Positions 8,795-54,394 of a DNA stretch of 64,000 nucleotides are shown piece by piece. Within the stretch, counting starts at the first letter, position 1. Every line of letters begins with the position of its first letter. Under the pieces are notes generated by a model. That model saw nothing but the letters and a program-made list of their open reading frames with translations. It searched no databases and was not told the origin of the DNA. The position numbers were made by a program, and so were the translations under genes. This stretch comes from Macrostomum lignano (taxonomy: Eukaryota): contig NIVC01001024.1 of assembly GCA_002269645.1 (NCBI GenBank), positions 62,001 to 126,000 of the forward strand, in the 5' to 3' direction.

Positions 8795-8859
8795 CTTGGT
8801 CCTTCGTTTCACAGTAGGATTCTATTGCTTGCCACGTCAGTGGTAATTTAGGCTTGTCC

Positions 8860-8877
8860 AACCACGCTCTGCTACCA
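8860..8877 (-). promoter_or_regulatory. Primer-binding site, tRNA-iMet type
   Basis: TGGTAGCAGAGCGTGGTT 3 nt from the 5' LTR, complementary to the ...CTCTGCTACCA end of initiator tRNA. Confidence 0.85.
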
Positions 8878-9452: not shown

Positions 9453-14539
<5,087 letters not shown>

Positions 14540-15089: not shown

Positions 15090-16582
<1,493 letters not shown>

Positions 16583-20228: not shown

Positions 20229-20235
20229 ACTGCAG

Positions 20236-25391: not shown

Positions 25392-25784
25392 TTCAATTTT
25401 CGGCAAGGAAAAAGAGCCAACTATAGCTTCTGCAGCGGCAGGAACCATTCGAGTATCGGATGCTAAATAATTATGAGAATACACTTAAAGACAGTTTTCT
25501 GTTCCGTTTTACTTTTTTGGGTTAGTAGTGGCCTTGTCACTCATTTATATCAATTTCTTCTGACCTTATTACTACGATTACTACGTATGCCGTTTTGCAG
25601 GGTCCTGTTAAAAGTACTAAATATAAAACTTTTGAAAAAGACAGAGTTTCTAATACCAATTTTGTTAGAGCGTTATCAAACCATAAACCTTTATTAAACC
25701 TAAATCATTGCATGTATATACCAAGAAGTTTGAGAAAATAGTTTTTGAGGAACGACATGGCTCCCACTGTAGACGTAAAAGTAT

Positions 25785-25840
25785 ATGACTGGAGACTCTC
25801 ATAGATGACTGAAGAGTCTCATATATGACTGGAGAGTTCT
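25785..25840. repeat. Short relic of the gactgg(a/g)gactctcatagat minisatellite
   Basis: Same unit as 32590-32880. Confidence 0.7.
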
Positions 25841-26335
25841 AAAATGTTTAAAAAATCTTTATTATGGTCACATTGCATAAAATGAGAGCGTTAAGAGCTG
25901 ACATCACATACTTGTACAACGGTAAGGCCCGTGGTAATTTGTGCATAGACTTCTGATAGTCATTACCCTAAATACTTTAAAACCAAAGAGAGAAAACTTC
26001 TTCTCTGCGACACAGCAGAAGCTTAAAGTTCTGAGCTATGCTAGTATCTACGCTCGTATTTCCATCTCATTCGTTTTCTTTTTTTTTCTATTTTACAAGA
26101 GAGTACACTCATTTTCTAACCCAAATTTTCTTCCATTATCTACGGTACCTTGTAAGGCAGTTTGTACATTAATCTCATGCTGCATACATCATGTTCCATT
26201 CTTCAAACACCAATTGTCACAAACTTGACAGTACATTAATTCTTGCTGGCTGCTGCGCACACCGCAGGTTACAAAAACACAACCACAAACACAGATAGTT
26301 CGCTGTGCGAAGATTCATCTCAAATACAGACAGCC

Positions 26336-28731: not shown

Positions 28732-28765
28732 AAGCACTGGTGACAGTTAACTGGGTAAATATTTT

Positions 28766-29887
28766 TCTATATGTAATACCTTTGTCACACATATCAATCT
28801 GTAATACCTTTGTCACCCATATCAATCTGTAATACCTTTGTCACCCATATCAATCTGTAATACCTTTGTCACCCATATCAATCTGTAATACCTTTGTCAC
28901 CCATATCAATCTGTAATACCTTTGTCACCCATATCAATCTGTAATACCTTTGTCACCCATATCAATCTGTAATACCTTTGTCACCCATATCAATCTGTAA
29001 TACCTTTGTCACCCATATCTATATGTAATACCTTTGTCACCCATATCAATCTGTAATACCTTTGTCACCCATATCAATCTGTAATACCTTTGTCACCCAT
29101 ATCAATCTGTAATACCTTTGTCACCCATATCTATATGTAATACCTTTGTCACCCATATCAATCTGTAATACCTTTGTCACCCATATCTATATGTAATACC
29201 TTTGTCACCCATATCAATCTGTAATACCTTTGTCACCCATATCAATCTGTAATACCTTTGTCACCCATATCAATCTGTAATACCTTTGTCACCCATATCT
29301 ATATGTAATACCTTTGTCACCCATATCAATCTGTAATACCTTTGTCACCCATATCAATCTGTAATACCTTTGTCACCCATATCAATCTGTAATACCTTTG
29401 TCACCCATATCTATATGTAATACCTTTGTCACCCATATCAATCTGTAATACCTTTGTCACCCATATCAATCTGTAATACCTTTGTCACCCATATCAATAT
29501 GTAATAGCTTTGTCACCCATATCAATCTGTAATACCTTTGTCACCCATATCAATCTGTAATACCTTTGTCACCCATATCAATCTGTAATAACTTTGTCAC
29601 CCATATCTATATGTAATACCTTTGTCACCCATATCTATATGTAATACCTTTGTCACCCATATCAATATATAATAGCTTTGTCAGCCATATCAATCTGTAA
29701 TACCTTTGTCACCCATATCAATCTGTAATACCTTTGTCACCCATATCAATCTGTAATACCTTTGTCACCCATATCAATCTGTAATACCTTTGTCACCCAT
29801 ATCTATATGTAATACCTTTTTCATCCATATCAATATGTAATAGCTTTGCCACCCATATTAATATGTAATACCTTTGTCACCCATATC
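28766..29887. repeat. 28-bp satellite tgtaatacctttgtcacccatatcaatc, about 40 units
   Basis: Direct reading. Confidence 0.97.
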
Positions 29888-30177
29888 GATTTGCAGTAGC
29901 CCTAACAGTATGCCATTTTGCTGTGTCCTAATTAAAAACACAAAATGAGAAAAAAATACAGCCTTCCATAATCCTTTATTTAAAGCGTGGTCAAACCGCA
30001 AAACTTCGTCAGACTAAATTATTTTCGAACTATGAATAAGCTGTGAATTTATTTTCATGACAAACGACATATCTCCTCCTGTAAAAGCACAATACCCTAC
30101 AGTACAGGACAATTTCAGACAGCAGAAATACTAGAAAAATGCAGTTTATTAAAAACTTCACTAGACGACACGAGAGG

Positions 30178-33269: not shown

Positions 33270-33528
33270 TTATAGTAGTTTTTTGTCGGTAGTACCAGAA
33301 AATCCTCACATATTTTCATGTTGCCTACTAATAGTAGACTACTTGAATATTATTTTTTTTACTGTTTGGAGTAAAACAAGAAAACTACGAGTATCAATTT
33401 ATTCTATTACCAATCGTTAAGGACCAATCTATCTATTTATCAACCTATCCATGTATTTATCTATCTACTTATCCGTCTATCTACCTACCTATCTATCTAT
33501 CTATCTATATATCTATCTACCTAATCCG

Positions 33529-33592
<64 letters not shown>

Positions 33593-33601
33593 CCTAATCC
33601 G

Positions 33602-33656
<55 letters not shown>

Positions 33657-33661
33657 GTCTG

Positions 33662-33705
<44 letters not shown>

Positions 33706-33714
33706 CCTAATCCG

Positions 33715-33754
<40 letters not shown>

Positions 33755-34065
33755 CCTAATCCGTCTATCTATCTATCTATCTACCTATCTACCTATCTAT
33801 ATATCTATATATCTACCTATCTACCTATCTACTCATCTTTCTATTTATCTATCTATCTTCTATCTTCTATCTATCTGCCTATCTATCTATCTGCCTATCT
33901 ATTTATCTATCTATTTACCTCTATCTATTTATCTAGCTTTAAAATTTTATTATCCTATTTGGAGCAGTAGTTTAAAAGTAGTATTAAAAATATTTTATGT
34001 TGCTGACTAATGGTAGACTGTTTGTACATTATTTTTTAATGTTTCGAGCAAAACAAGAGAACCAT
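33270..34065. repeat. (ATCT)n microsatellite 33425-33935 between diverged ~110-bp direct repeats (33270-33390, 33965-34065)
   Basis: atatttt.atgttgc..actaat.gtagact...attatttttt...gag.aaaacaaga.aac on both sides. Confidence 0.8.
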
Positions 34066-35117: not shown

Positions 35118-37918
<2,801 letters not shown>

Positions 37919-39816
37919 TTCTATAATTGATCTGCAAGTAAGTCAATCGATTATCTAAAGCAGCTGATATTTCTATATACATGTAGGTAGGTATCATAAG
38001 CACACCACAATAAACATATTTTGGTGCTCCCTATAGGAAAAAGTTGTAAAACCACAGACAGCATCCAATGCATTTTTTTTTTAATTTTTCTAAAGCGCAG
38101 TGCCCTTTCCTGCTGGCTACTGCTCCAGCAAAAAAATATATAGAAGGGCCTAATGCCTCTGTGGAAGGGGCCTATACACTTGTCATTTATAATGCTTAGA
38201 GATGTTCTGAAATTTTAATTTCGATTTTCTAAATTTCAGAATTTTTAAGAGTAAATTTTAATTGCAAAAAAATCATCCAATTAAAAATCTCTAAAAAGTG
38301 GCTAAATATAAACTGATTTATGCTACATATACATGTATTTTGTTTTGCATGAGCATAAAAAAGTGAGTTTTAAGGCATGCATCTGCAGGTTTTCAACATT
38401 TATTCCAATAGGGTTGGTGCCTAAGACAGATATTCCTAGATTTAACAGGTACAAAAATGTGCATTTGCCAGGACGTTTAAAGTAATAGCATGCATTAAGT
38501 TGCTATTTAAATAAATATCATGTATCAAGGCAATCAAATTTTTAATGTTATTTCTATATTATAGCCATATTATAGCAGCTATATTATATACAGACTATAA
38601 TTGAATTAAAATTCAAATAGTGCTATTTTGTCAAATGAAAGCCAATTGTCAAACAGTCAGAAAATAATCATTTTAATATTATATAAACATATTCTTATAT
38701 TCTTCTGTCTTTTCCTTGCTTTTTACCTGCTTCTTTATTTTCTATTTATTTGGCGATGCCAAAGGTTGTCAACATCAGCCACTTTAGCCCTCCACTGAGC
38801 AAGAAGCTGTTAACTTGCTGCAAGCAATGAAGGCTGCCAATGAAGCCAAAAAAGTCCAACAGCAAGGCTACGCTGCCAGCAACACTGCCAGCCAACAGCA
38901 AGCCACTGATAGAGCTGCACCCACCAGCGACAAAGCTGAGGCCATCAGCCAGCCATTACTAGGACTCACAGTAATCACTTACCAGCTTTAGTAGCATGAC
39001 AGGTTGCCTGTCTAGGAGCCACAAACTACTAGCTGAAGGTGACAAGGACAGCAACCACAGTATAGCCCAAGACAACTGCTGCCAACCCACTTGCTGAGAA
39101 GAGAGTGAGGTTCAGTTCTTGTATTTCATTATCTGCTAACAAATCCAAATCTGAAGATAGTCATACCAAAGCTACTGACAAATATCGACCTTTGGGCACC
39201 TCAACAAAATGTCAATTGGTCCAAGTAGTGATCATGCAAAGGGAGCTCTAGACCCCTAACCATGCTGCCATAGCCAAAGCTGCACCAATTAAAATTCTAC
39301 TAACAGACGCCAAACTTTGAATCTAACTGATTACATCCCAAGGCCAGTCACTCACAAGGAGCTCCAGACCTATCAGCATGCTAACTTTGCCATCACTATG
39401 GTGATCAACCTAATCGAAAATTGACAACCAAAGCTGCTGCTAAATCAGTGATTAAATTTGACAAGAGACAAACAAAATCTACTAGAATTTTATAAGCAAC
39501 TCGAAGTCTGAGACAGGACTGCTATGTTGGCAAGGAAGAGACAGCATGAATCATCCTGCCAAAGAGCCTTAATGTTACTGTTTGCCAACCTACATGGTTT
39601 ACTCTATTGTGGACACATGGGCCAAGACCTCACTGTTGCTAAAGTGTGTGAAAGGTTCTGGCAATGTGCCCTGGCAAAAGTAGTGTCTGACTATGTTGCT
39701 TCTTACCAGACCTGCACTCAAAGCAAAGGATGGCAACAAATTCCAGCGCATGTACAATTGTTTCTAGTCTGTGAGATCTATGGGCAATGTGCAATCAACA
39801 TCCTAAGCCCCATTAG

Positions 39817-39988
39817 CATACATGCGCAACCTTGGGAATCACTCGGCCGTTTCTATTGGCAACACACACATGTAAGTCGCTATTGGCTGAGAGCTGTAAC
39901 GTGACTACTATTCTGTCCAATAGCGACTTATGTGTGTGTGTTGCCAATAGAAACAGCCGGGTGAATCCCTAGGTTGTGCCCAAGCATG
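39817..39988. mobile_element. 172-bp palindromic MITE, P-superfamily-like
   Basis: 8-bp TSD CCCATTAG (39809-39816, 39989-39996), CAT...ATG termini, ~70-bp imperfect inverted arms; absent from the aligned young integrase. Confidence 0.9.
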
Positions 39989-42900
39989 CCCATTAGAGAC
40001 CCAATGGACTGGGGCAACAAGTACATCTTGACCTATATCAATACCATGTCAAAGTATTTATTTGCCTTCACTATGAAATATCAGTGCACCAAGACAATCA
40101 TCACTTTCCTGCAAGAACAAGGCTTCCTGATCAATAGAATCCCCATGTGGATCCATTCAGATCAAGGCAAACAGTTCACAGGACATAAGTTCTGACATTT
40201 CTGTGAGGTCTATGGTATCCAGTAGACAACAATGCACCATACTTGCCCTGGGCCAATGGAAAGCTAAATTGTGCAATAAGAACATTAAGAAAGTGCTTAC
40301 TTGTCTCCTCAAAGATCATCAACAATGAGACAAGATGCTACTAGCTGCTTTGACCATACTAAGGTCAGCCATCAACCATACTACTGGCAACCAGTCTATT
40401 GAGTGTCTTATTGGTACCACAATCAATAACACCCTAGACTGCCTGGACATATTGGCTGATCTCCTAGAGTACATCACCAAGCATCTGCACAGACTGGCCA
40501 AGACAAAGTGAATTGTATGACAACGACTGCAAGCTAAGATTTAACACCGAGAAGAGTATTACAAAAACTGACCAAAGCCCATGGAACTGCAGCCTGGAGA
40601 CCTAGTCTGCCTAGCCAACTTGGAGCTTGAGTTGGGAAAGCTGCCCAAGTTCTACTAGCCATACAAGAGCATGTACAAGGTCACTAAAAAGGTTGGCAAA
40701 GTAGCCTACTGGATCAAGCCTGCAACAGCCCAACAAGGATGCCTAGCTGAGATGTTTATCCATCGAAACAATATCATCAAGGTGCCGCAGATGATGGCAG
40801 ACCCACCATAGGAGTTGCCATGCAAAACTGAGTAGCCTATGCTGCCCTACAAGTCGAGCCTTGAAAGCAAAGCCAATCAGCCAATCAGCCCATTCTAGAG
40901 TAGCCAGCCGCAGATCAGCCTGACCTATGAGGCAGCCAGCTGTTTGAGCCAAGCCTCTGCCATTTAGAAGTGCTACCCAGAGGCAACCTAGATCTGCTTG
41001 AGATTAGCATAGAGGTTGAAATTTAAAGGTTATTACCAGCAATTATTGTTGCACCTTGTTGACAACTGTTGATACACATTACTATCAGTAGTCAAGTTTG
41101 CAAATAAATTTTAATTTAATTTGCCGCTGCCTACTTATATATGCTGAAAGCTGAATTTTTATTTTCTGTTTAATTTGACCTTATGCTTGAAGGTAAAAGC
41201 AGCCAATTTTCTTGTCATTGTCCCATGCTTGAGGGCAAAAGCAACCAATTTTTCTGTTTAACTTGGCCTTATGCTTGAGGGCAAAAGCAGCTTTTATTAA
41301 GCTTATGCCATTTCTTTATGCTTTCTAGCTAAAAACAGCATTTTCCTTTGAGCTATTTCAGTGCTTATGTACATTTTGCATTTGCTTTTTATCCAATGCA
41401 TTATAGTAAACTAGCACCTTGCACTCTAATATTTAGCCTTAGGCTTTATATTAGAAGCCCGTACCAATGCGTCAATATTTAACCAATTTGATATATTACC
41501 ATTGCTTAATTGCATTTTATAGGATTTTTGCATATCCCTATTTCATTCTGAGCTTTCTTTGCATGCAATCAAAGTGTGGAAAGTATCCTTTCTTTTCACC
41601 CTAACCTTATGCTTTTGGGAGAAAAGCAACAATTTCTATAAACCTTGCAGTTTGATTAAAACTGAAGGTATCTTTTCAATTTTGCGAGACTACTGTTTGA
41701 AGGACCATATAAACTTTTGCCCTGCTCACATAATAAGGCCCTGTTTCTAGGCCATGTCCTCAGAAAAGGGCATCTGAGATAACTCAAACCCTGTTCCTTG
41801 TCCCAATTTTGCACAAGCCTAGGAACTCTATGAGGGCCACCAGTTTGGCTTTTCTCCTAATGCCTTTTGCTAGCCCCTGTTTAATGTAACTCCTTATAGA
41901 GCCCCTTCCTCATGCATGACATATCGGTTGCTAACCTACTATTATTAAAATATCATTAATAAGGTGCCTACAATTGCCTTTTACTATTATAATATTTTTC
42001 CTCAACTTAATGTTTACACATTCAGCCTCCTCCTAAACACTAGTTCATATAAGATAGAGGCCTTATTCCCAGTATGGGACCCTCCTTTGTCTATCTGCAA
42101 GACACCACCTTAGTATTAAAGGCTGTTTTTTAACTTTGATTGCTTATTATTATAAATTATTCTGTGCCACACTATTATCTAAATCTGGCTAATTTCAAGT
42201 TTAATTTCCCTACATAGACTGTCAACTCCTCTTTGTTTTCATTCAATCTTGTTATTGTATACCCTTGTGAGTTTCTGCAAAATTTCTGACAACCCAATGT
42301 GGAATGGAGCTGCCCAATTGCTGCATTTGGCTCCCCATGACTAGCAAGACTTTGCCAATAATCCCCTGGTGCACTGCAATTACAATGCCTTATTGACGCC
42401 TACCCCAACCTTGAGTCTAGCTGAGTCAATGCCCAAATTGGTGGCTATCTAGTCTAGGACACCTTGGCTTTGTCTAGATAAGGCGGCCACTTTGCACACC
42501 TTCATGACTAGGCAGTATATCAGGCCACTAGAAAGGGACGCATGCAACTTATCCCAGCTGGCGAATGCTCTGTGGGTTCATGCTATTAGAATTAACCAAG
42601 GATCTCCTTGTAGAACAACTCACGTTTGCCAAGGAATATCTATGGCACAGACTGGGCTGACTACATCCAGCTTTGGCTTTACTCATGGCCTTAGCCTATT
42701 TGGAGGCCGGCTATCTCTAGGGAGGCTGGGACCCTAGGCTTTGCCGATTCTGGGATTCTGCAGTGGAGAAGTGCCCTGAGCATTTGCATTTCGATATAGC
42801 TGGCCAGGTCTATATACTCAGATAGCCAGTAAGTTTGCTTGCTGCCACTGCCCAACCTTGGACAACATGAGGTGAGGCCCAGAGCAAACCAGCCTGGAAC

Positions 42901-44850
42901 ACATGGCCTGTGGTCTGAGGTGGTCAAATGCCCACTAGCCAAGGTAGACACAACTGAGCAGCAGACTGCTAATATTTGTTAACAAGCTTATAGCCACCCA
43001 ATGCATGTGTTAGTTGGTTGCCATTGATTATTAAGAGACTGATTTAATAGTTTAATTTTTTATCTTCTTTGAAAATGCATCTGGTATCTAGCCCTGGAGC
43101 TAATTTTCCTGCTCCCGGGCAATTTTGTCATTTTTCTTGTCCTATTCATGGCATAGCATTTGTCTTCTCAATCCCTAGTCTTTCCACTTCTTTGTAGTAG
43201 ATCTTTTTGTTTTCTCCATTCAATCCTATATGTTATTTTGGTATCTATGCCTTGTTGTCCTTTCTCAGTCTATTTTGTCCCTTGCCTGACCCAACTGTTG
43301 GTGCTTGTTTTTATCCTATAAATATTGCTTACTTTACATGCTATTGAATTATTCTCTATCTTTCCCTTTTCCTCTCTTGTTTGTTTCACCTTTTCATCTT
43401 TTGGTTTGATCAATTAGTTACTTATATTTTGCTTTGACTCAAAGATCCCTACTTGAATATCTTGCTCTTTAATATGCATTCATATTTTTGCCCACACCAT
43501 GGCTCTGTTAGAACATCTCTATTGCAAGAAGCTTATTTCTTAAACTTGCAAAATAGCCACTAATAAGAATATTATGCCAACATTTATTTCATTAATTACT
43601 CAAAGCCCATAGCTTTATCTCGAGTTATTTGCCCATGGGGCATAAAACAACCAAACAGTTCTCATCTCAAAGAAAGTTCTAAGACTAATTAGTTCTATAA
43701 TATGAAAATTACAGTGGTGGCGGCTCTTTTCTATTGATAATAATTAGCTAAGCAAATCAATGTACATTAAATTATGATGTTAAAACTCTAGTGTCTACCA
43801 TTTGAATTACCATGCCTATTAAATGACTGCTTGACTACAATTACAACTACCTTCCCCCTGGGACTTGAGGACTTGGCAGCCAATGTAAAACAGGAGAAAA
43901 TCTAGTTATGATTTGTCTGTGTAATTTTCTAGTTTTTTTATGCAAACTTAATGCTAGTGTGGTAGGCCGGTCTACAACTGGGGTGAATGACGGCAGATCT
44001 CCCGCGGGCGACGACATGAGGACGGCCAGACAGATTGACGTCATTTTTTTTCAACTTTTGTTCCCTGGTTTGTTCCCCCATTTGTTCCCGCCCTTGCTCC
44101 CTTGTCTGTTCCCTTTTCTGTTCCCTCCCTTGGCCCCTGTTGTTTTAATGTTTCCAGCAGCCGGGTTTTCCTCTTTTTCCCTTCCTTGTCCCTTCCCTTG
44201 TCCCATCCTCTGTCCCACCCCTGGGATCCTTCACGCCAATATGTTATATATGAGTTATCTCTGGAGTCATTTTTTTAAAGTGTGTGTGTTTGTTTGGGTT
44301 TTAGTTTAGTTAGTTTCTACTCTTGTCTCTGCTCGTTCATCTCGCGTAGCGATAATAACTAACCGTAATAATAATTAACGAAATAATAATAAGTTTGCAA
44401 CATTTAATATTTATTCAGTTGTTCAGAATCGAAGCCTTTAGTTTTCTATTGAGTCATTTGCCCGCGGGGCCTAAAATAACCAATCAGTCTCATCTCAAAG
44501 AAAGCTCTGAGACCCTAAACGTTCTGTAAAACGACATTTATGGTGGTGGCAGCGCTACTTTACTACTGAGAGTAACACAACTAGCAATTTCGACAAACTA
44601 TAATTTTTCGGTGTCTGAGGACCTAATTTGAACGACCCGGGCTGCTACAGGACCGCTCGACTACGATTACGACTACCTCCCCCCCCCCCAGAATTGAGGA
44701 CCCGGCAGACGGAGTAACCTAGGAGAAGAATCAGCGCAGCAATTTGTGCAATTTTCCGGCTTTACGTGCCAATGACAAACCCAAATTTTTTATTTTCCCT
44801 AATCTTACAATTTCAAATCTTGTTTATTTTCTTCACTACCCCCACCTCAT

Positions 44851-44870
44851 TGGTGTCAGCTAAGTGGGAT
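44851..44870 (+). promoter_or_regulatory. Primer-binding site, tRNA-Leu type with a 2-nt insertion
   Basis: TGGTGTCAG(CT)AAGTGGGAT versus TGGTGTCAGAAGTGGGAT. Confidence 0.75.
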
Positions 44871-44990
44871 TACGAGACGCCAAAACCCATTCGACGAGTC
44901 GTAATTATTACTACTAATTCAACGGCCGCAGACGCGACAAACGACGCCGCGGGCCCCAACAACTCAAATACAAGACCGACCTACGACAAG

Positions 44991-46292
44991 ATGATTCACG
45001 CGGTGACCAAAGAGGTGCGCTAGCGACTGGAGCAGACCAGCCTGGGCCAGCCGCAACACCATCATCATGTGTACCAGCAGCCCCAGCAGTAGGATCGAAC
45101 TCCAGCGCCAAAACTGGTCAAGATTCAGCAGATCACGCCCAACCAGGAATTTGACGTCTGGATCAAGGCTCTCGAAGAGCGATGCAAGCTCAACGGAATC
45201 GTTGACGACAGACGAAAGAAGGCGGAGGTCCTTGTGAATTTGGACATTGCCACCACCTACCCCGCAGTCGTCAGAATGGAGCTGCCGGATAATCTGACGT
45301 TTGGTGAGTTCAAACAGCGATTATCTGAACGCTTTACACATGTTGCCGACACGCTGGAGTACCGGGAGCAGTTCCGAAGCTGCTAGCAGGGCAAGAATGA
45401 GAATGTTGACAACTACGGCGACCGACTAATTGCTCTGGCCGATCGAGTGTTCCCGCATTTTACCCCAGTTCAGAAGCAGGCTGAACTGGTGGATCAATTC
45501 ACTGTGGGAGTGCAGATTGCTCAGTCGGCCCGAGAACAGCTCATCCTGGTGTGACCGCCAAATCTGACTGCAGCGAGGAGGGCTGTGCTACGCCTGGAGA
45601 CAGCAGCTAGTCTGGCTCAGCGTGTAGCACCGCCGCCAGCAGCGAGGCATGTCCAGGTCCTGGAAGATGACGACAGTCAGACGCCCATTGCGGTGCAACA
45701 CGACGCCAAGTCATCTCGGCCCGAGGAGAACTGGTTGCGGGAAGTCATGGAACAACAAGCCGAGACATTGCAAGAGCAGCGACGCCTACTTGAAACTTTG
45801 AGTAATGAGATGCGAGAGTTCTACTCTTGGGGATCGCGCGATAACGACGCCCCGGAGCCATGGGAACCTCGCCACCAGCCGCGGGACTCGTGGGGCCAAT
45901 GCTCCAGATGTCTGGTACCCTCGACTCCTTGCCGCAGTGCCGACAGAAGCGCCCAATTTACGACACCTGGCACACGTATGGTGCCGCAGCAACCATTCCA
46001 TCGACTTCAGCAACCACGAGACGGCAGCAACCCGCTGCCGAGAACGCCGCCAGCAGGAGGTCAACGTCAGCAGCAGCAGCAGCTGCAGCAACGGTCGAGT
46101 TCGAGGCCGCCGCCCTATCAGCTGCGGCGGCAGAATGCCATGTGTTACAGGTGCAATCGCGAGCACCGCGCCGATGAGTGCCCGCACCGACGGTCGGCCA
46201 GCACCGCATCCCAGCACAACAGCAGCTCGGGAAACGGGACGGCTGGACGCGCCATCGGGGGAAGCGACATCCAGCAGCCGAGCCAGCACTGA
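44991..46292 (+). pseudogene. gypsy gag with four in-frame stops
   Basis: EQFRSC*QGKNENVDNYGDRLIALADRVF, LVDQFTVG, CYRCNREHRADEC knuckle. Confidence 0.85.
46229..46280 (+). promoter_or_regulatory. -1 ribosomal frameshift signal at the gag-pol junction
   Basis: G GGA AAC in the gag frame at 46229-46235, pol is in the -1 frame, and a downstream gctgga...tccagc stem follows. Confidence 0.75.
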
Positions 46293-49200
46293 AGTCCCCG
46301 CCGCGGACTTTAGTCACTCAGCAGGCCACTGCTGAGACCGCCACCGCCGCACCTGTACAGCCATTAGCACCCAAGCGACCTTGGAGAGACCCGTTTCTAA
46401 CTGGTAAGATTCAGGGCCGCTATTTTGCTTTCTTGCTTGATACCGGGTCCAAGTGCGAAGTCCTAGGATTCAGCACCTGGCACCACCTATGTACTGACGA
46501 CCCGACCCTGCGTGGCCAAATTGAGCCCTGCCTTTAACATATCGTGACCTACAATGGAGAGCCTATTCAAATGGCAGGCCAGCTATCTATTAAAGTGAAA
46601 ATTGGTAATTTCGAGCCTACAGTCAAGTTTCTGCTAGCGAAAGGATCGCATGACAACATTCTGGGTTTCGAGTTCCTGGAGAAGTACAGCACATCACTGG
46701 ACCTCGCCGCCAGAATGCTGTTTTTCAAGGACGGCACTGCCGCACCGCTTTGCTATACGCGAACTGAAGCTACAACGTGCAGAATTTACACCGCCGAGAG
46801 CACTACGGTGCCACCATTATCATCTGCCCGAATCAAAATCAAATTAGCAAAAGGACGAGAAGAAAACCAGGGTACACCCGCAGTGATTGAGCCGCTGAAA
46901 CCGGCTCGGCGTGAAGAAGATGTGCAGCACCTGGATGCCGCGCCTGCCTTGATTTCCATGGCTAATGGAGAAGGCGCTATCGAAATGATCAACCATGGCA
47001 CTACAGCCATCAAAGTGCGAGCGAATGCCCTAGTCGGGATTGCTAGACCAATCAGACTGCCCGAGCTACATTTCTTCCCGCTGCTGAAATCAGAAGACTC
47101 TGTCAATCAAATCCAAGACGAGGATCCCGATGCCTGGATTAAGGAGATCGATATCAGTGAGGATCTGTCCAAAGACCAGCGCGCTCAAGTCATCGAGCTA
47201 TTGAGAAAGTACAAGACCATCTTCTCGCAGGGGCCACACGATCTCGGCCGAACTCATCTGGTCACCCACAACATCGTACCTACAAATTGTGCAAGATTTC
47301 AGGAGTCTGAATCAAAAGTGTGAGTACTTTCCGTACCCGATTCCTAATATCCAAGAAGCGTTCGCTAGCCTTGAAGGAAGCCAGCTATTCAGCACGTTTG
47401 ACTTGAACAGCGGCTACTATCAGATTCCACTGCGTCCAGAGGATCAAGATCTGACTGCCTTCGCCATGCTGCACCGCGGACAATTCGCCTACAATGTTAT
47501 GCCTTTGGGACTAAGTTCAGCTCCAGCCAGCTTCATGCGACTGATGAACACTGTGCTCAACGGGATCGCCTACAAAAGTGCAATAGCCTATCTGGATGAT
47601 GTCATCGTCTATTCTAAGAAATTCAACAATCACCTACAACATATGGAAGAAGTTTTCAAATGGGTTCAAGAAGCAAATCTAAAGTTCAAAGGCAAGAAGT
47701 GCCATCTATTTCGGGCCAGTATAAACTATCTGGGACATGTGGTAACAAAAGATGGAATCAAGACTGACCCAGCTAAGATCGAAGCGATTCAAACCTGGCC
47801 AAGACCAAGGACAGCTCGCCAACTTAAAAGTTTTGTCTGCACGTGCGCTTATTATGCCAAATTCGTCCCTAGCTATGCAGAACTTGCTGCTCCACTCCAC
47901 GATCTGATTAAGGAGAAGAGGATTAGAAACTTCAATTGTCTATGGGGAAAAGCCCAGCAAGATGCGTTTGATCAGCTCAAGGCCGCAATGACTTCGACGA
48001 CAGTGCTCGCGTATCCGCAGTTCAGTGAAGATCCAGATGTAATGTTTATCCTGGACACGGATGCTTCTGCGACCAGAATCGGAGCCTGCCTGAGCCAACG
48101 CCAAGCTGATGGAGTTGAGCGACCAATTGGCTATTTCTCCCGGCGACTGAAACCAGCCGAAGCCCGATATCCGATTACTAAACAGGAACTCTTTGAATGC
48201 GACACTTCAGATTCTACCTGCTGGCCAAGAAGTTTATCTGCCGAACTGATCATGCCGCATTAACCTGGATCTTAAGGCGAACTCAGCAAGAAGGAATCTT
48301 TGGACAATGGCTACAGAGACTAAGCGAATTTGAGTTCGAGATCCAGCATTGCAAATCGAGTCAGCATCAAAACGCCGACGGTCTCTCGAGACGGCCGGAA
48401 GACGACGCCGAATGCTTGGAGGAGGCTCAGCGCAAGGCAGCTGATGAGGACCAAAGTAAGCAGCCAGCCGCGATAACTGGCGCAGCGGCGCTGAAGGTCC
48501 ACGACAGCAGCCACCCTAGTCCTCCACCGAGCAAGAAGCCGTCGACCCGCCGTAAGCGACGGAAACCGCCGACTAAGCCGAAGGAGTCCAACGGCGAGGC
48601 TACGCCGCCAGCAACCCCGACAGCCAACAGCAAGCCGCTGACAGAGCTGCACCCGCCGGCGACGAAGCCGAGGCCATTGGCCAGCCATTACGATGACTCG
48701 CAGAGGTCGCCTACCAGTTTTAGTAGCACGACATGTTGCCCGTCAAGGAGCCGCCGACTACTAGCTGGAGACGGCACAGACAGCGACCACAGCGCAGCCA
48801 GAGAGGACAGCTGCCAACCCGCTCGCTGCCCAAAGTTTGAGAAGAAGGTGAGATTCAGCAGCGACGCGGACAGCTCTGCTGACTCATCATCAACTGCTGA
48901 CCGATCTGAATCTGACAACAGTGACACCAAAGCTACCAACGAGGATCGACCTTCGGGCACATCAATGACCCGGCAACCGGCCAGAGTAGCGATCGTGCGG
49001 AGGGAGCTCCAGACCCCAAACCATGCCGCCATAGCCGAAGCTGCGCCGACTAATTTGACTAATCGACGTTCAACATTGAATCTAACTGATCACATCCCGA
49101 GGCCAGTCACTCGTGAGGAGCTCCAGACTCATCAGCGTGCTGACTCTGCCATCGCCATGATGATCAACCTTTTGGAAAGCTGACAGCCAAAACAGCCACT

Positions 49201-50418
49201 AAATTAGCGATTGAATATGACGCGAGACGAACGAAACTTACTAGCGTTCTACGAGCAGCTCGAAGTCCGAGACGATGGACTATTAGTTATTCATCTCGAC
49301 AATATTGGCGAAGAGGAGAAAGCGCGGATCGTTCTGCCGAAGAGCCTCGACCCCACTGTGTTTGCCGACCTGCACGGTTCGCCCTACTGCGGACACATGG
49401 GCCGAGACCTCACAATCGCGAAGGTGCGCGAAAGGTTCTGGCGACCTGCCCTGGCCAAGGCAGTGTCCGACTATGTTGCTTCCTGCCAGACCTGCACTCA
49501 AAGCAAAGGACGGCGACGAATTCCGGCGCATGTACAGTCGTTTCCGGTCTGCGAAATCTATGGGCGATGTGCAATCGATATCCTGGGCCCCACTGGAGAC
49601 CCGACAGACCGAGGAAACAAGTACATCCTAACCTACGTCGATACTACGTCAAAGTATCCATTCGCCTTCGCCATGAAAAATCAGCGCGCCAAGACAATTA
49701 TAACTCTGCTGCAGGAACAAGTCTTCCCGATCACCGGAATTCCCACGTGGATCCATTCAGACCAGGCAAGCAGTTCACTGGGCACGAGTTTAGACATTTC
49801 TGCGAAGTCTATGGCATCCGGCAGACAACGACGCCGCCATATTCGCCCTGGGCCAATGGACAAGCTGAATCGTGCAACAAAAACATCAAGAAGGTGCTCA
49901 CTTGTCTTCTCGAAGATCATCAACAGTGGGACAAGATGCTGCCAGCCGCTTTGACAGCCCTGCCATCAGCTGTCAATTGTACGACGGGATTCTCGCCGCA
50001 TTACGTCGTCTACGGAGTGCCTTATCAGTACCCGATCGATAACACCCTAGACCGCCTGGACATATCTCCGGACCTCCCCAAGTACATCGCGAAGCATCAG
50101 CGCAGACTGGTCAAGACCGAGAGAATTGTGCGACAGCGATTGCGAGCCGAGATCCAACGCCGCGAAGAATACTACGAGAACCGACCCAAGCCCGTGGAAC
50201 TGCAGCCCGGAGATCTGGTCTGCCTGGCCAACCTGAAGCTCGAGTTGGGTGAGCTGCCCAAGTTCCACCGGCCGTACAAGAGTATGTACAAGGTCAACAG
50301 AAAGGTTGGTGAAGTAGCTTATTGGATCCAGCCAGCAACTGCCCAACAAGGACACCCCGCCGAAATGTTGGTACATCGCAACAACATAATTAAGGTGCCG
50401 CAGATGATGGCGGATTGA
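46236..50418 (+). pseudogene. gypsy pol (protease, RT, RNaseH, long linker, integrase), several stops and frameshifts
   Basis: FLLDTGS; DFRSLN, FDLNSGYYQ, MPLGLSSAP, YLDD; LDTDAS, TDHAAL; HGSPYCGH..C..C, IHSDQG, NGQAESCNK. Confidence 0.93.
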
Positions 50419-50807
50419 CCACAGGAGCCACCGCGCCAAACAGAGCAGCCAATGCTGCCCTATGAGTCGAGCGAAGACAGCAAAGTCGACCCAGCCAATC
50501 AGCCCGCGCCAGAGCAGCCGGCCACAACTCAGCCAGACCTGCGAGGCAGTCAGCTGTTTGAGCCAAGCCTCCGCCATCCGGAAGTGCTCGCCGAAGGCGA
50601 CCCGGATCTGCCTGACATCGGCATGGAAATGGAGATCTGAAAAGGTATTTACCAATGAATTTTCTGTTGCGCCAAGTTGCTAACTTTCGATGCGCATTAC
50701 TAGTAGTAGTCTAATTTGTGAACACATTCCGATTTTAATTTCGCGGTAAGCTTTCTCTGTACCTGTTCTGTGCTGAAAGCAGATTTCAATTTTCCAGTTC
50801 AATTTTA

Positions 50808-51135
50808 TTTTCCTTATGCTTGAGGGATAAAAGCAACAAATTTTCTGTACTTTCCTTATGCTTGAGGGCAAAAGCAATTAATTTTCTGTACTTTCCTTAT
50901 GCTTGAGGGCAAAAGCAATTAATTTTCTGTACTTTCCTTATGCTTGAGGGCAAAAGCAACTAATTTTCTGTACTTTCCTTATGCTTGAGGGCAAAAGCAA
51001 CTAATTTTTCTGTACTTTCCTTATGCTTGAGGGCAAAAGCAATTAATTTCTGTACTTCCCTTATGCTTGATGGCAAAAGCAGTGTTTTTCAATGTACTTT
51101 CCTTATGCTTGAGGGCAAAAGCAACTAATTTTTTT
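50808..51135 (+). repeat. Eight ~41-bp tandem units inside the gypsy 3' region
   Basis: tttccttatgcttgagggcaaaagcaattaattttctgtac; three related units at 41180-41292 in the old copy. Confidence 0.95.
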
Positions 51136-52076
51136 TCCCATTTCTGCTCCTTACGCTTTCCGGTCAAAAGCCTTTGTACATTGTGCTCATGCTCAATTGG
51201 TGCACCTATTTATTCAACGCGACCTGCATTTCTGCGTTCTGATATTTAGCCTTAGGCTTGATGGGAAAAGCTAGCACCTACGCGACAATTATTTATCCGC
51301 ATGCGATTCATTAATTTGCTCAATTGCATGTCATTAACTTTGCGAAGTTATATTTCAATTGTAAACCTTGCAGTCCTTGCTTGTGGCTGAAGGTATTTTT
51401 TTTAATTTTTGCAAGCCAATGTTGCTCTGGTGCCCTAGTCGTTTGCCCCGCTTAGGTCTAGCCACCCTGGCTCTAGGCCTTGTCCTCAGCGGAGGGCATC
51501 TAAGGTGAATGGCCCCCTTTTTCTTTGTTATGACTGAGCCGAGCCTGGGAAAATTTGTAAGGGCGCCTGTCCAGCCCCTTCCCAGTGCCTTTTGCCGTTT
51601 TGTATAACTCCTTATGGAGATCCAAATTCTAACTCGGTCACTATGCCTGTATCTATCTGCTATTCTAATTTTTAGGAACTACCTATGTTCTTACTATTTT
51701 TCTAAACTATTGTTTATGCGACTGTTCAGCCCCCCCCCCCTCTCTCTCTAACCGCCAACCTGTTTTGTGAGCCGTGTGAGGCGCCCCATTCATTCATTCT
51801 GATTTTGGACCCCTGCCGCGCGGTTATCTATTTTATGACTCCTTGATTCATGCGCCCACCCCAACTCTGTGTGCCACCTTAGAGTGCATGGGGGTGATGG
51901 CTCAATTCCAGTGGTTGAATTTTATTTCCTCTGGTTGGTTTGGAATTCCACCAGTTGGAATATTTTGCGCCCTATTTAAGGAGCCATCTTCAATTTTATT
52001 TTCTCCAATTCTGTTGATCCGACCTGCTAAGCTAAATTTTCTTCTGGACACTCGCATTACGTCTCGTCACAGCTCT

Positions 52077-52595
52077 ATGGCTAACAATTGGTCCAACGGC
52101 GACAACGTCTCTCCAGAGATGCAGACAACCGCGCCCTGGCTGTCCACCAATGAAGCTGACACCCTGCGGGCCCTGGCCACTGCCCCGAGCGGCGCGGCCC
52201 CAGCTCGCGAACAGCTCCGCCGCGCGCTCAACGAGGCCTACCACCAGGCGGCCGACAAGGGCCGCGTTCAAGTGGATGTCCCATGGCGGACACTCTGCCG
52301 CGAAATGCCGCCCGTGACCACGAGGGAGCTCCTCGATGCGACGCTGCGGCATGCAGATGCCTGCTTTCGCGAGGGAGGACGACCCCGGCCTGCCCTTGCC
52401 CTATTTGTCACGCTGGCTTATTGGGAGGCGGGCCACCTCCAGAACGGATGGCTGCCAGAGGTCCGCCAGTTCTGGGAGGCCGCCATCGAGAGGTGCCCGG
52501 AGCGGCTTTACTTCGACGGGCAGCGCCTGCAGCTTCTCGACCTTCAGCCCGAGCCTGCGCGTGGCCGGCCGGCGAAGCAGGACTGCCGCCCCTGA
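52077..52595 (+). CDS. Unknown 172-aa accessory protein (third ORF of the gypsy element)
   Basis: Intact GC-rich ORF from ATG 52077, cacag| acceptor 4 nt upstream; homologous decayed ORF at 42429-42800 keeps the amino-acid motifs. Confidence 0.8.
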   Translation: MANNWSNGDNVSPEMQTTAPWLSTNEADTLRALATAPSGAAPAREQLRRALNEAYHQAADKGRVQVDVPWRTLCREMPPVTTRELLDATLRHADACFREGGRPRPALALFVTLAYWEAGHLQNGWLPEVRQFWEAAIERCPERLYFDGQRLQLLDLQPEPARGRPAKQDCRP

Positions 52596-54394
52596 GACGT
52601 CCGGGAGTTTGTCTTTCTGCTGCCGTTCGCCCCGGCGCCCCCGCGCCTGTGGTAGGCCGGTCTACCACTGGGGTGAACGATGGCAGATCACCTGCGGGCG
52701 ACGACATGAGGACGGCCAGACGGATTGACGTCATTTTTTTTTCAACTTTTGTTCCCTGGTTTGTTCCCCCATTTGTTCCCGCCCTTGCTCCCTCGTCTGT
52801 TCCCTTTTCTGTTCCCTCTATTGGCCCCTGTTGTTTTAATGTTTCCAGCAGCCGGGTTTTCCTCTTTTTCCCTTCGTTGTCCCTTCCCTTGTCCCATCCT
52901 CTGTCCCACCCCTGGGATCCTTCACGCCAATATGTTATATATGAGTTATCTCTGGAGTCATTTTTTTAAAGTGTGTGTGTTTGTTTGGGTTTTAGTTTAG
53001 TTAGTTTCTGCTCCTGTCTCTGCTCGTTCATCTCGCATAGCGATAATAACTAACTGTAATAATAATTAACGAAATAATAATAAGTTCGCAACATTTAATA
53101 TTTATTCAGTTGTTCAGAATCGAAGCCTTTAGTTTTCTATTGAGTCATTTGCCCGCGGGGCCTAAAATAACCAATCAGTCTCATCTCAAAGAAAGCTCTG
53201 AGACCCTAAACATTCTGTAAAACATACAGCAAAGTGCTACTTTACTACTGAGAGTAACACAACTAGCAATTTCGACAAACTATAATTTTTCGGTGTCTGA
53301 GGACCTAATTTGAACAACCCAGGCTGCTACAGGACCGCTCGACTACGATTACGACTACCTTCCCCCCCGGAATTGAGGACCTGGCAGACGGAGTAACCTA
53401 GGAGAAGAATCAGCGCAGCAATTTGTACAATTTTCCAGCTTTACGTGCCGACGACAAACCCAAATTTTTTATTCTCCCTAATCTTACAATTTCAAATCTT
53501 GTTTATTTTCTTCACCATCCATCCCCACCTCACTAGTAATAGTTCAAAAGTCAAAACCCCTTATTTTGGTATTAGCCAACTGACCACATTAAAATTATAG
53601 GCCTATTTCTTTTTCTGCCCCTACCTTAATATTTATTCTAATTTTAAGAAATAAATGCCAAGAATATATTATAAATATATAAAATATTATAAGCTAATAT
53701 TTATAATACATATATTTACTAAATATTTCAATAGGCCTTAATATTAATATTATGACCTATTTTACTAGGACCTATATTAATATTAGCACATTCTGTTTTA
53801 TTAGGCTTATTACTTATTAAAATTATATTATAGTTGCTAGGCCTAGGCTTATCATTAAAAAACATATTGTCTTATTTAATTTTAACTAGGCCTATTATAA
53901 GTTTAAAATAAGCCTAAGCCTTAGGCTAAGGAAGCGGAAGGAAATATTTTGCCTAACATTAAAAAAAATATTTTTTTGTAATTATTATATAACTTTTATT
54001 TTAAAAGGAAGTATTGACACTATTGCATACCATAAACATGGCAAAAATCATTAAAGTTTATAATTATATTATAGGCCTAATGTTGGCAAATGGCAATCCT
54101 GCACTGGTGCACTTTAATTGAGTAAATTATTTTGACATCGAATATGCAAGTTAAGCCCCCTACACTATTTCAATTTTACATGGATAGCAGAGACTTGTAT
54201 TTAATTAAAATCAGTCTTGTAAGTAATTATGTAAAAACATACTTGCTCACATATACACACTAGGCCTAATTCATATGGCACTAGCTTGTGGCCTCCCGGA
54301 TGAATGGATGATAGATCCGTCAGGCACCACCGAATCACTGCAGACAGGACTCGGACTGCAGTTGCACAATCCTGCGACCTGCGGCGACTGTTAC

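What the first reader, a model, noticed from the sequence alone, without database searches (positions are those of the whole stretch)
52077..52595. Unknown non-env accessory gene conserved in a gypsy lineage
Seen: an intact 172-aa ORF in the env position with no signal peptide or transmembrane segment. The old, diverged copy encodes the same motifs: TPWLCLDKAATL versus APWLSTNEADTL, TKDLL versus TRELL, and PALALLMALAYLEAGYL*GGWDPRLCRFWDSAVEKCPEHLHFD versus PALALFVTLAYWEAGHLQNGWLPEVRQFWEAAIERCPERLYFD. Both have an AG a few nt before the ATG, as expected for a spliced subgenomic RNA. I recognise no family. Inference: a selected, TE-encoded soluble helical protein; an anti-silencing or RNA-binding role is a hypothesis, attractive given the CpG decay seen here.
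Basis: partly seen in the sequence, partly recalled or inferred. Interest (0 to 1): 0.82.

Follow-up and report, generated by a model that had tools for sequence, protein, structure and literature searches.

The report
Orphan third gene in flatworm retrotransposon
The 172-codon reading frame is a real, selection-maintained "third gene" that one lineage of gypsy-type retrotransposons of Macrostomum flatworms carries between integrase and the 3' LTR; it encodes a soluble helical protein with no known relatives, and its role is still unknown.

Summary
ORF 52077-52595 (172 aa) is intact, has no signal peptide or membrane segment, and lies 52 nt before the 3' LTR of a Ty3/gypsy element (43958-53532, TSD CTAG). 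The older copy upstream carries the same motifs in a broken frame.

It is a real gene. Homologues occur only in Macrostomum lignano, at five loci plus one chimeric gene model without DNA, each after an integrase of this lineage or a remnant of one. pN/pS is 0.37-0.41 in frame and 1.3-1.6 out of frame, similar to gag (0.45) and integrase (0.39).

No sequence or fold relative was found (Pfam, PDB, 1.84 billion proteins, Foldseek). It is neither env nor a chromodomain.

Some copies add a second helical domain and an Arg/Gly-rich tail.

The window's element is dead, with about 11 breaks in gag-pol. An intact ORF3 here is therefore expected by chance (P about 0.36).

Upstream, diverged copies share a module: a conserved box, a 13-nt palindrome, a TATA-like box, then a pyrimidine run ending in AG. 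M. lignano copies lacking pol or a 5' LTR are annotated from transcripts. This suggests an own promoter or trans-splicing rather than only LTR-driven splicing.

Function is inferred by analogy only, with Cer1 CERV the closest case. The anti-silencing idea has no support.

The parts
43954..43957 (.). Left target-site duplication, CTAG. The right copy is at 53533-53536.
   Evidence: Sequence flanking the LTR ends.
43958..44849 (+). 5' LTR, TG...CA, about 892 nt.
   Evidence: 94.9% identical to the 3' LTR over 880 columns. Ends fixed from the alignment and the TSD.
44850..44868 (+). Primer-binding-site-like stretch (TTGGTGTCAGC...) directly after the 5' LTR.
   Evidence: TGG starts 1 nt after the LTR end. 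The matching tRNA was not identified, and the window holds no tRNA gene.
44865..46292 (+). gag with one CCHC-like zinc knuckle. Broken gene: four in-frame stops and probably a lost start codon.
   Evidence: 83% aa identity to the gag part of M. lignano model P0003. Stop count. No Pfam hit.
46166..50650 (+). pol in the order PR-RT-RNaseH-IN. Broken gene: three frameshifts beyond the gag-pol junction and about four in-frame stops. Domains: RVT_1 47295-47741, RT_RNaseH_2 47943-48194, Integrase_H2C2 49337-49510, rve 49574-49774.
   Evidence: Pfam hits. Frame order and stop counts. 82-86% aa identity to P0003.
50788..51157 (.). Array of about 41-nt tandem repeats in the non-coding spacer between pol and ORF3.
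   Evidence: Family D13. Also present in the old copy at 41158-41290. L001 has repeat arrays in the same spacer.
51853..51981 (+). Conserved non-coding module upstream of ORF3: C-rich box 51853-51865, TTAGAGTGCA box 51879-51888, palindrome TCCACCAGTTGGA 51947-51959, and TATA-like CTATTTAAGG 51972-51981 (105 nt before the ATG). Candidate internal promoter.
   Evidence: The same order of boxes occurs in L001 and L002. Window vs L001: 93 nt at 72%, E 8e-10. L001 vs L002: 44 nt at 80%, E 4e-5, 0 of 100 shuffles. The pattern TCCANCNGNTGGA occurs once in the window (0.04 expected), once in each of L001-L004, always in this module, and not in L005.
52037..52072 (+). Pyrimidine-rich run ending in AG, 4 nt before the ATG. 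Possible 3' splice or trans-splice acceptor.
   Evidence: L001 and L002 have comparable runs ending in AG 32 and 19 nt before their ATG. No RNA data were available.
52077..52595 (+). ORF3, 172 aa including the stop codon. The conserved helical core is residues 19-147 (52131-52517). This is the shortest known form, lacking the second domain and most of the Arg/Gly-rich tail.
52648..53532 (+). 3' LTR. The 52 nt between the ORF3 stop and this LTR hold no polypurine tract.
38772..43957 (+). Older, 5'-truncated copy of the same lineage (RNaseH/IN, spacer repeats, ORF3 remnant, LTR pieces at 43600-43879). The young element is inserted in or just after its 3' LTR.
   Evidence: 76-78% nt identity to young 48504-50917, plus LTR matches. 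CpG o/e is 0.14-0.23.
42429..42850 (+). ORF3 remnant of the older copy. Broken gene: at least two frameshifts and three in-frame stops. Same motifs as the young ORF3.
   Evidence: The ATG region aligns with that of the young copy.

Best explanation
ORF3 is a genuine protein-coding accessory gene of one sub-lineage of Ty3/gypsy LTR retrotransposons of Macrostomum flatworms. It sits between integrase and the 3' LTR.

Shown:
- It codes for a soluble domain of about 130 residues, made of six helices and a small three-stranded sheet, with no signal peptide or membrane anchor.
- Its position is the same in all copies found.
- It has evolved under purifying selection about as strong as that on gag and integrase of the same elements, while changing faster in absolute terms.
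- It has no detectable sequence or fold relatives.
- It is modular: some copies add a second helical domain and an Arg/Gly-rich tail, while the window copies have only the first domain.

Inferred:
- The protein is made from its own short mRNA, not from the gag-pol message.
- That mRNA either starts at a conserved TATA-containing module 100-200 nt upstream, or is cis- or trans-spliced at the pyrimidine-AG site just before the ATG.
- It ends at the poly(A) site of the 3' LTR.

Inferred by analogy only: the protein acts in trans for the element as a regulatory or RNA-handling factor, as CERV does for Cer1 and Rev/Rex or Tas/Bet do for complex retroviruses.

The copy in this window belongs to a dead element. 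It is best read as a well-preserved fossil of that gene.
For: Coding and selection:
- NG86 dN/dS is 0.19-0.23 over whole alignments.
- Block pN/pS for ORF3 is 0.41 (Fisher p 8e-15), against 0.45 for gag and 0.39 for IN in the same pair of elements.
- pN/pS is 0.37-0.39 in frame and 1.3-1.6 out of frame, with a third-position excess of differences.

Lineage-wide position:
- L001 has gag and IN at 77-80% nt identity upstream, ORF3 at 10001-10876, and LTR-like sequence after it.
- L002, L003 and L004 have an IN remnant about 1.4 kb upstream.
- Model P0003 runs LTR-gag-PR-IN-[second domain]-LTR.
- The old copy in the window has the same layout.
- L005, a more distant M. lignano gypsy element (RT 50% aa), lacks ORF3.

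Protein properties:
- Soluble.
- AF2 with a 4-sequence alignment gives pLDDT 67.9, pTM 0.62, and 76-91 in the core.
- No hits in Pfam or PDB sequences even at E 10.
- Only M. lignano proteins were found among 1.84 billion representatives.
- Best Foldseek E is 0.5 against PDB and 0.2 against BFVD, with TM below 0.4.

Own expression:
- A conserved upstream module is shared by diverged copies.
- No LTR pair surrounds the L001 or L002 ORF3.
- Both are nevertheless GenBank gene models from an annotation built on transcripts and filtered against repeat overlap (PMC5730564).
- The stop codon lies 25-52 nt before the LTR-like start in the window, L001 and L002.

Against: - No RNA or protein data for this ORF were available, so the promoter, splice site and mRNA ends are predictions.
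- The upstream motif pattern was derived from the same sequences in which it was then counted.
- The spacer further upstream is also alignable between the window and L001 (295 nt at 62%), so conservation of the module between those two is not exceptional.
- Only four independent intact sequences and two decayed or partial ones exist. dS is saturated (pS 0.70-0.76), so omega values are rough.
- HSP-based blocks favour conserved stretches.
- ORF3 pS (0.72) exceeds that of gag and IN (0.47-0.53) for the same element pair, which is unexplained. Possible causes are recombination, composition (GC3 0.77) or an older split.
- The window copy lacks the tail and the polypurine tract, so it may be 3'-deleted.
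- Nothing in the sequence indicates a biochemical activity. There is no zinc knuckle, no known RNA-binding domain and no clear NLS or NES.
Confidence: 0.55

Rival explanations
1. Co-opted (domesticated) gene. At least the P0002/P0006 form is now a host gene. It survives with its own promoter in three homeologous, pol-less loci between a DM9 gene and a DEAD-box helicase gene, and is kept by selection on the worm rather than on the element.
For: - L002, L003 and L004 hold an intact ORF but only a 33-aa IN remnant, with no gag, PR or RT within 10 kb.
- In L002 vs L004 the ORF differs at 4 of 702 sites against 78 of 4418 in the flanks (Fisher p 0.015). ORF plus module gives p 0.001.
- Only one amino-acid change and one 5-aa repeat indel separate P0002 and P0006.
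- These are transcript-based gene models that passed a repeat filter.
Against: - The duplicates are very young (0.4-2% divergence), so few changes are expected in any case.
- L002 vs L003 alone is not significant (p 0.49).
- Gene conversion or local rate differences could produce the same pattern.
- The window's two copies and L001 sit inside recognisable elements.
- The selection signal between families (dS saturated) predates these loci.
Confidence: 0.15
2. One reading: ORF3 counteracts host silencing (DNA methylation or piRNA), comparable to viral suppressor proteins or foamy-virus Bet.
For: - ORF3 evolves fast relative to pol: 56% aa identity against about 80% for IN in the same pair. This is compatible with a host-interaction role.
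- The host has DNMT1 and DNMT3 and low 5mC (PMC11292947).
- The old copy shows strong CpG-to-TpG/CpA decay, so methylation-type pressure on this lineage is plausible.
Against: - No similarity to any known suppressor in the BFVD or PDB fold searches.
- The CpG decay is a property of one old copy and is unrelated to ORF3 presence. The decayed copy had ORF3 too.
- pN/pS shows purifying selection overall, with no sign of positive selection at this resolution.
- Other TEs in the window without this gene are not CpG-depleted either.
Confidence: 0.12
3. Passenger. ORF3 is a captured fragment of a host or foreign gene that rides along without serving the element.
For: - ORF3 is much more G+C-rich (0.68, GC3 0.77) than RT (0.47) or the spacer (0.42).
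- It is separated from pol by 1.4-3 kb of repeats.
- The accessory region is modular and variable between close relatives.
Against: - No host or foreign homologue was found among 5.8 billion clusters and 1.84 billion representatives.
- Purifying selection matches that on gag and IN across element families whose silent sites are saturated.
- gag of the same element is also G+C-rich at 0.62.
Confidence: 0.08
4. Degenerate env or chromodomain remnant, or a chance open frame in G+C-rich DNA.
For: - The ORF is in the env position.
- G+C-rich DNA gives long spurious ORFs. Several overlap ORF3 in other frames and on the other strand.
Against: - No signal peptide or membrane segment.
- No Pfam env, F-protein or chromo hit even at E 10, and no fold match.
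- The frame control and cross-copy conservation rule out chance.
Confidence: 0.02

Closest known systems
CERV of Cer1, the Ty3/gypsy element of Caenorhabditis elegans (PMC10309623)
   Same: [quoted passage not shown]
- Not an env.
- No homologues outside the host genus, and fast-evolving like gag.
- Made from a separate (spliced) mRNA.
- An acceptor-like pyrimidine-AG lies before the ATG here as well.
   Different: - No detectable sequence similarity: the profile search of 1.84 billion proteins returned only M. lignano.
- CERV is 517 aa, with N-terminal exons shared with gag and a GTPase-like G domain. ORF3 is 172-291 aa and all-helical, with no GTPase-like fold hit.
- ORF3 has a TATA-containing module of its own.
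- Function (genomic RNA export) is shown for CERV and unknown here.
Additional ORFs of plant Ty3/gypsy elements, e.g. the Retand pol-to-3'LTR region with the TRP28 domain (PMC11963269)
   Same: [quoted passage not shown]
- It also holds a conserved extra ORF of unknown, presumed regulatory, function.
- Variable architecture between families.
   Different: - The Retand ORFs are antisense, whereas ORF3 is in sense.
- Different kingdom.
- No homology: no Pfam hit.
Env-like third ORFs of flatworm and insect gypsy elements, i.e. Boudicca and Saci-3 of Schistosoma mansoni and the errantiviruses (PMC2582038)
   Same: A third ORF after pol in a flatworm Ty3/gypsy element.
   Different: Those ORFs resemble envelope glycoproteins. 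ORF3 has no signal peptide, no membrane anchor and no env similarity.
Accessory genes of complex retroviruses, in particular foamy-virus tas/bet driven by an internal promoter (from my own knowledge, not tested here)
   Same: - Small non-structural proteins encoded at the 3' end.
- Expressed from sub-genomic messages.
- A second, internal TATA promoter just upstream of the accessory ORF is what the conserved module suggests here.
   Different: - No fold match to any viral protein in BFVD.
- The promoter is only predicted.
- The host element is an LTR retrotransposon without env.

Membership tests
Ty3/gypsy (Metaviridae) LTR retrotransposon (applies to the host element) | Two LTRs ending TG...CA, flanked by a short target-site duplication | tested here: met
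   LTRs at 43958-44849 and 52648-53532, 94.9% identical, with TSD CTAG.
Ty3/gypsy (Metaviridae) LTR retrotransposon (applies to the host element) | pol domain order PR-RT-RNaseH-IN, and gag with a zinc knuckle | tested here: met
   Pfam RVT_1, RT_RNaseH_2, Integrase_H2C2 and rve occur in that order. A CCHC-like knuckle is seen in the gag translation. The clade within the superfamily was not determined.
Ty3/gypsy (Metaviridae) LTR retrotransposon (applies to the host element) | Primer-binding site after the 5' LTR and polypurine tract before the 3' LTR | tested here: inconclusive
   A TGG-initiated stretch follows the 5' LTR, but no tRNA was matched. No purine-rich tract occurs in the 52 nt before the 3' LTR of this copy.
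Retroviral / errantiviral envelope glycoprotein | N-terminal signal peptide and C-terminal membrane anchor | tested here: not met
   N-terminal 20 residues have a mean hydropathy of -1.0. The highest 19-residue mean is 0.63.
Retroviral / errantiviral envelope glycoprotein | Sequence or fold similarity to env / baculovirus F-type proteins | tested here: not met
   No Pfam hit at E up to 10. No Foldseek hit with E below 0.2 in PDB or BFVD.
Chromodomain of chromoviral integrases | Chromo domain C-terminal to IN | tested here: not met
   No Pfam Chromo hit in the IN pieces or in ORF3. ORF3 is a separate frame 1.4 kb downstream of pol.
Cer1 CERV-type accessory protein | [quoted passage not shown] | tested here: met
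Cer1 CERV-type accessory protein | Homology to CERV (H, M and GTPase-like G domains) | tested here: not met
   The profile search of 1.84 billion representatives returned no nematode protein. No GTPase-like fold appears among the Foldseek hits.
Cer1 CERV-type accessory protein | Translated from a spliced mRNA that joins gag-proximal exons to the 3' ORF, and required for export of genomic RNA | not testable with these tools
   Only an acceptor-like pyrimidine-AG before the ATG is visible. No RNA data were available.
Internal-promoter accessory genes (foamy-virus type) | A second promoter inside the element, just upstream of the accessory ORF | tested here: inconclusive
   A conserved box, palindrome and TATA-like module lie 100-200 nt before the ATG in three diverged copies. 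Copies without a 5' LTR are annotated from transcripts. No transcription start data were available.
Plant-type additional ORFs (Retand TRP28 and others) | Homology to the TRP28 domain or other described aORF domains | tested here: not met
   No Pfam family matches ORF3, P0001 or P0002 at E up to 10. Whether Pfam includes TRP28 was not checked. The shared features are positional only.

The most novel reading that the evidence does not exclude
This gypsy lineage has a two-promoter organisation. ORF3 is transcribed from its own internal TATA promoter, independently of the LTR. It encodes a new fold that acts in trans on the element's RNA or against host silencing. Because it is self-sufficient for expression, it outlives the rest of the element and is being co-opted by the worm at the triplicated DM9-to-helicase locus.
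Probability: 0.2. Interest if true: 0.75.

Novelty: new variant of a known kind. Interest (0 to 1): 0.55.

Why it matters
Extra genes in LTR retrotransposons are known, but very few have been understood in animals. Cer1 CERV is the main example.

This finding adds a second, unrelated animal case:
- The gene is clearly under selection.
- Its fold has no detectable relatives.
- Its domain make-up is modular.
- It may have a promoter of its own.

The host is a flatworm that can be made transgenic and already has public RNA-seq, 5'-end, spliced-leader and poly(A) data. How the gene is expressed could therefore be settled from existing data.

The finding also flags M. lignano 'hypothetical protein' genes (BOX15_Mlig013834, BOX15_Mlig017912) as retrotransposon-derived, with one set possibly being co-opted.

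It is not a breakthrough in itself, because the function remains unknown and the copy in this window is a fossil.

Tried and rejected
Protein identity searches that found nothing:
- Pfam at E 0.1 and at E 10 returned nothing for ORF3, P0001 or P0002.
- A PDB sequence profile search returned nothing at E 10.
- AF2 of the 291-aa P0001 with a 2-sequence alignment was too poor to use (pLDDT 49).
- The better 172-aa model gave no Foldseek match in PDB or BFVD.
- A second word-indexed search with a 3-sequence profile added no new family members.
- P0004, from the profile search, is a repeat protein and a spurious hit.

Domain questions:
- The N and C domains are not internal duplicates (best E 0.28).
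- No remnant of the second domain exists in the window.

Placing the element and the organism:
- The RT search gave only 45-50% hits and no clade assignment.
- Exact-protein look-ups of the window ORF3, of the myotubularin-like ORF and of P0003 found no record, so the source organism is inferred only from the homologues.
- The window shares no stretch of at least 88% identity with the fetched M. lignano loci.

Other negative results:
- No LTR pair surrounds ORF3 in L001 or L002.
- The ORF3 upstream module is not derived from the LTR.
- The rest of the old LTR could not be found after the young insertion.
- Rfam and tRNA scans of the window were empty.
- No heat-shock element of the type described for M. 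lignano LTR elements occurs in this element.
- The gene identifiers Mlig017912 and Mlig013834 appear in no searchable paper.
Full report
1. WHAT IS AT THE COORDINATES

The frame 52077-52595 (+) opens with ATG, runs 172 codons and ends in TGA. It lies inside an LTR retrotransposon.

- The LTRs are at 43958-44849 and 52648-53532. They are 94.9% identical, run TG...CA, and are flanked by the 4-bp duplication CTAG.
- Between the LTRs lie gag with a CCHC-like knuckle and a pol with Pfam RVT_1, RT_RNaseH_2, Integrase_H2C2 and rve in gypsy order.
- A 1.4-kb non-coding spacer follows, holding an array of 41-nt tandem repeats. ORF3 comes next, and its stop lies 52 nt before the 3' LTR.
- The element is dead. 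gag has four in-frame stops. pol has three frameshifts beyond the gag-pol junction and about four stops.
- With about 11 breaks in about 1870 codons, a 172-codon frame stays open by chance with P about 0.36. The intactness of this copy is therefore not evidence of selection.

2. THE SECOND COPY

Directly upstream (38772-43957) lies an older, 5'-truncated copy of the same lineage, 76-78% identical in RNaseH/IN. The young element inserted in or just after its 3' LTR.

It is spread over three frames with in-frame stops.
- Both copies have an AG 3-4 nt before the homologous ATG.

3. IS IT A GENE?

The only database relatives are Macrostomum lignano proteins:
- P0001, 291 aa, 56% identical over 142 aa, E 5e-41.
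- P0002 and P0006, 233 and 238 aa.
- A region of the chimeric model P0003.

Comparisons between the window ORF, L001 and L002 give a clear coding signal:
- Whole-alignment dN/dS is 0.19-0.23.
- In the conserved core, pN/pS is 0.37-0.39 in the annotated frame and 1.3-1.6 in the two shifted frames.
- Differences per codon position are about 0.30, 0.25 and 0.64.
- For the same pair of elements, ORF3 (0.41) is as constrained as gag (0.45) and IN (0.39).

ORF3 is thus a protein-coding gene that was under purifying selection while these element families diverged.

Caveats:
- Silent sites are saturated.
- Few sequences are available.
- HSP blocks favour conserved parts.
- ORF3 silent divergence (0.72) is higher than that of gag and IN (about 0.5). 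This is unexplained.

4. IT BELONGS TO THE ELEMENT

- In L001 the homologue (10001-10876) follows gag and IN of the same lineage (77-80% nt identity, RT deleted) and precedes LTR-like sequence.
- In L002, L003 and L004 it follows a 33-aa IN remnant.
- P0003 reads LTR-gag-PR-IN-[second domain]-LTR and is 83-85% identical to the window element in gag and pol.
- L005, a more distant M. lignano gypsy element (RT 50% aa, LTRs 99.9% identical), has no ORF3 and no separate frame after IN.
- The gene therefore marks a sub-lineage, not all gypsy elements of the worm.
- The source organism is inferred to be a Macrostomum. Exact-protein look-ups did not find the window itself.

5. THE PROTEIN

- It has no signal peptide and no membrane segment.
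- AlphaFold2 with four sequences gives pLDDT 67.9 and pTM 0.62, with the core at 76-91.
- The model has six helices (24-35, 37-61, 69-76, 79-100, 105-117, 127-138) and a small sheet (63-65, 144-146, 150-153). Both termini are disordered.
- Nothing matches in Pfam or in PDB sequences even at E 10.
- Foldseek finds nothing better than E 0.5 in PDB or E 0.2 in BFVD, with TM below 0.4.
- The family is modular. All copies share the N domain. P0001 and P0003 add a second helical domain (38% identical over 100 aa, E 2e-15).
- P0001, P0002 and P0003 end in Arg/Gly-rich tails. The window copies have the N domain only.
- The young copy also lacks a polypurine tract before its LTR, so it may be 3'-deleted.

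6. HOW IT IS PROBABLY EXPRESSED

The window, L001 and L002 share an ordered non-coding module upstream of the ATG. In order it contains:
- a C-rich box;
- a (T/C)TAGAGTGCA-type box;
- a 13-nt palindrome matching TCCANCNGNTGGA;
- 10-17 nt later, a TATA-like box (TATTTAAGG in the window and L001, TATAAAA in L002);
- a pyrimidine-rich run ending in AG, 4-32 nt before the ATG.

Evidence that the module is specific:
- The palindrome pattern occurs once in the 64-kb window (0.04 expected) and once in each of L001-L004, always in this module. It is absent from L005. The pattern was derived from these same sequences, so this shows specificity and is not an independent test.
- Window vs L001 aligns over 93 nt (E 8e-10). 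L001 vs L002 aligns over 44 nt (E 4e-5).

Evidence from the M. lignano copies:
- L001 and L002 have no LTR pair around ORF3.
- Both are nevertheless GenBank gene models from an annotation built on transcripts, trans-splice sites and poly(A) sites, and filtered against repeat overlap (PMC5730564).

The three cannot be told apart without RNA data.

7. WHAT IT PROBABLY DOES

Nothing in the sequence indicates an activity. The best-supported statement is positional and evolutionary: this is an accessory gene kept by the element lineage.

- The closest known case is CERV of Cer1. CERV is an ORF in the env position that is not an env, is restricted to Caenorhabditis, is made from a spliced mRNA and is needed for export of genomic RNA (PMC10309623).
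- ORF3 shares these general traits but no sequence or fold, so it is not a member of that family.
- Plant Retand elements share the long, repeat-bearing pol-to-LTR region with a conserved extra ORF of presumed regulatory function (PMC11963269).
- Schistosome Boudicca and Saci-3 have env-like third ORFs (PMC2582038), which this is not.
- I therefore commit, with moderate confidence, to a trans-acting regulatory or RNA-handling role for the element. This step is analogy only.

8. RIVALS

Co-option by the host is a serious second reading for the P0002/P0006 loci:
- There are three homeologous pol-less copies between a DM9 gene and a DEAD-box helicase gene.
- The ORF has 3-4 times fewer substitutions than its flanks in one comparison (p 0.015; with the module, p 0.001). 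The duplicates are so young that power is low.

The anti-silencing idea has no direct support:
- The CpG decay is confined to the old copy, where CpG o/e is 0.14-0.23 against 0.7-1.1 in most of the window, apart from low values over the 28-32 kb satellite arrays.
- Of 107 CpGs in the aligned young sequence, 73 read TpG or CpA in the old copy and 7 are kept.
- This fits the low-level 5mC with DNMT1 and DNMT3 reported for M. lignano (PMC11292947). It says nothing about ORF3, which the decayed copy also carried.

The passenger, env-remnant and chance-ORF readings are contradicted by the selection, hydropathy, family and fold results.

9. VERDICT

- It is a new variant of a known kind, namely extra ORFs of LTR retrotransposons.
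- It is of moderate interest, and its mode of expression can be tested with existing public data.
- The direct functional test of its role in the element's propagation is not proposed here.

Noticed in passing
window 38000-44000 (old gypsy copy), compared with 44000-53500: Strong, local CpG depletion. CpG o/e is 0.14-0.23 with a TpG/CpA excess over the old copy only. The young copy and most of the window are at 0.7-1.1. Of 107 CpGs in the aligned young sequence, 73 are TG or CA in the old copy and 7 are kept, and transitions outnumber transversions 247 to 89. This looks like methylation-driven decay of one silenced copy, and it inflates that copy's apparent age.
   Followed up: partly
L002, L003, L004 at 10001-10702/10717 (M. 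lignano NIVC01000292.1, NIVC01001863.1, NIVC01004115.1): Three homeologous loci between a DM9 gene and a DEAD-box helicase gene keep an intact ORF3 with its upstream module, but only a 33-aa integrase remnant. In one comparison the ORF shows fewer substitutions than its flanks. This may be co-option in progress.
   Followed up: partly
window 52596-52647: No polypurine tract lies between the ORF3 stop and the 3' LTR, and the ORF lacks the tail seen in relatives. This copy may have a 3' deletion spanning both.
   Followed up: no
ORF3 compared with gag and IN, window young element vs L001: Synonymous divergence of ORF3 (pS 0.72) is well above that of gag and IN (0.47-0.53) for the same two elements. 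The domain make-up of the accessory region also differs between close relatives. Possible causes are recombination or module exchange, a composition effect (GC3 0.77), or both.
   Followed up: no
window 4118-9164 (- strand): A BEL/Pao-type LTR element: a 1227-aa ORF with DUF1759, RVT_1, Peptidase_A17 and DUF5641, flanked by 284-nt direct repeats that are 100% identical. It looks like a very recent insertion.
   Followed up: partly
window 9603-16142 (+ strand): A non-LTR (LINE-type) element with endonuclease, RT and RNase H ORFs. Internal 2.1-kb direct repeats lie at 12730-13960 and 14830-16054 and are 95-98% identical.
   Followed up: no
window 18512-27934: Three copies of a repeat unit (spacings 5.3 and 2.6 kb, 77-96% identical) carry long ORFs of 446-661 aa. 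The two scanned have no Pfam match. The nature of this repeat is unknown.
   Followed up: no
window 27981-30000, 30966-31600, 32552-32819, 33370-33866: Several satellite arrays with periods of 9, 28, 12, 41 and 8 nt. The 28-30 kb block has a strong GC skew (-0.39) and CpG o/e of 0.22.
   Followed up: no
window 36533-37918 (- strand): An uninterrupted 461-aa ORF with GRAM and myotubularin-like phosphatase domains (E 1.5e-101) lies just upstream of the truncated old gypsy copy. It is probably a host gene or exon. No exact-match record was found.
   Followed up: partly
P0003 (UniRef A0A1I8GNL1) and P0005 (A0A1I8I3Q9), M. lignano ML2 gene models: Both are chimeric predictions. They fuse retrotransposon LTR, gag, pol and ORF3 sequence with neighbouring host genes (a family-C GPCR and CHMP2a), so their database names are misleading.
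   Followed up: partly
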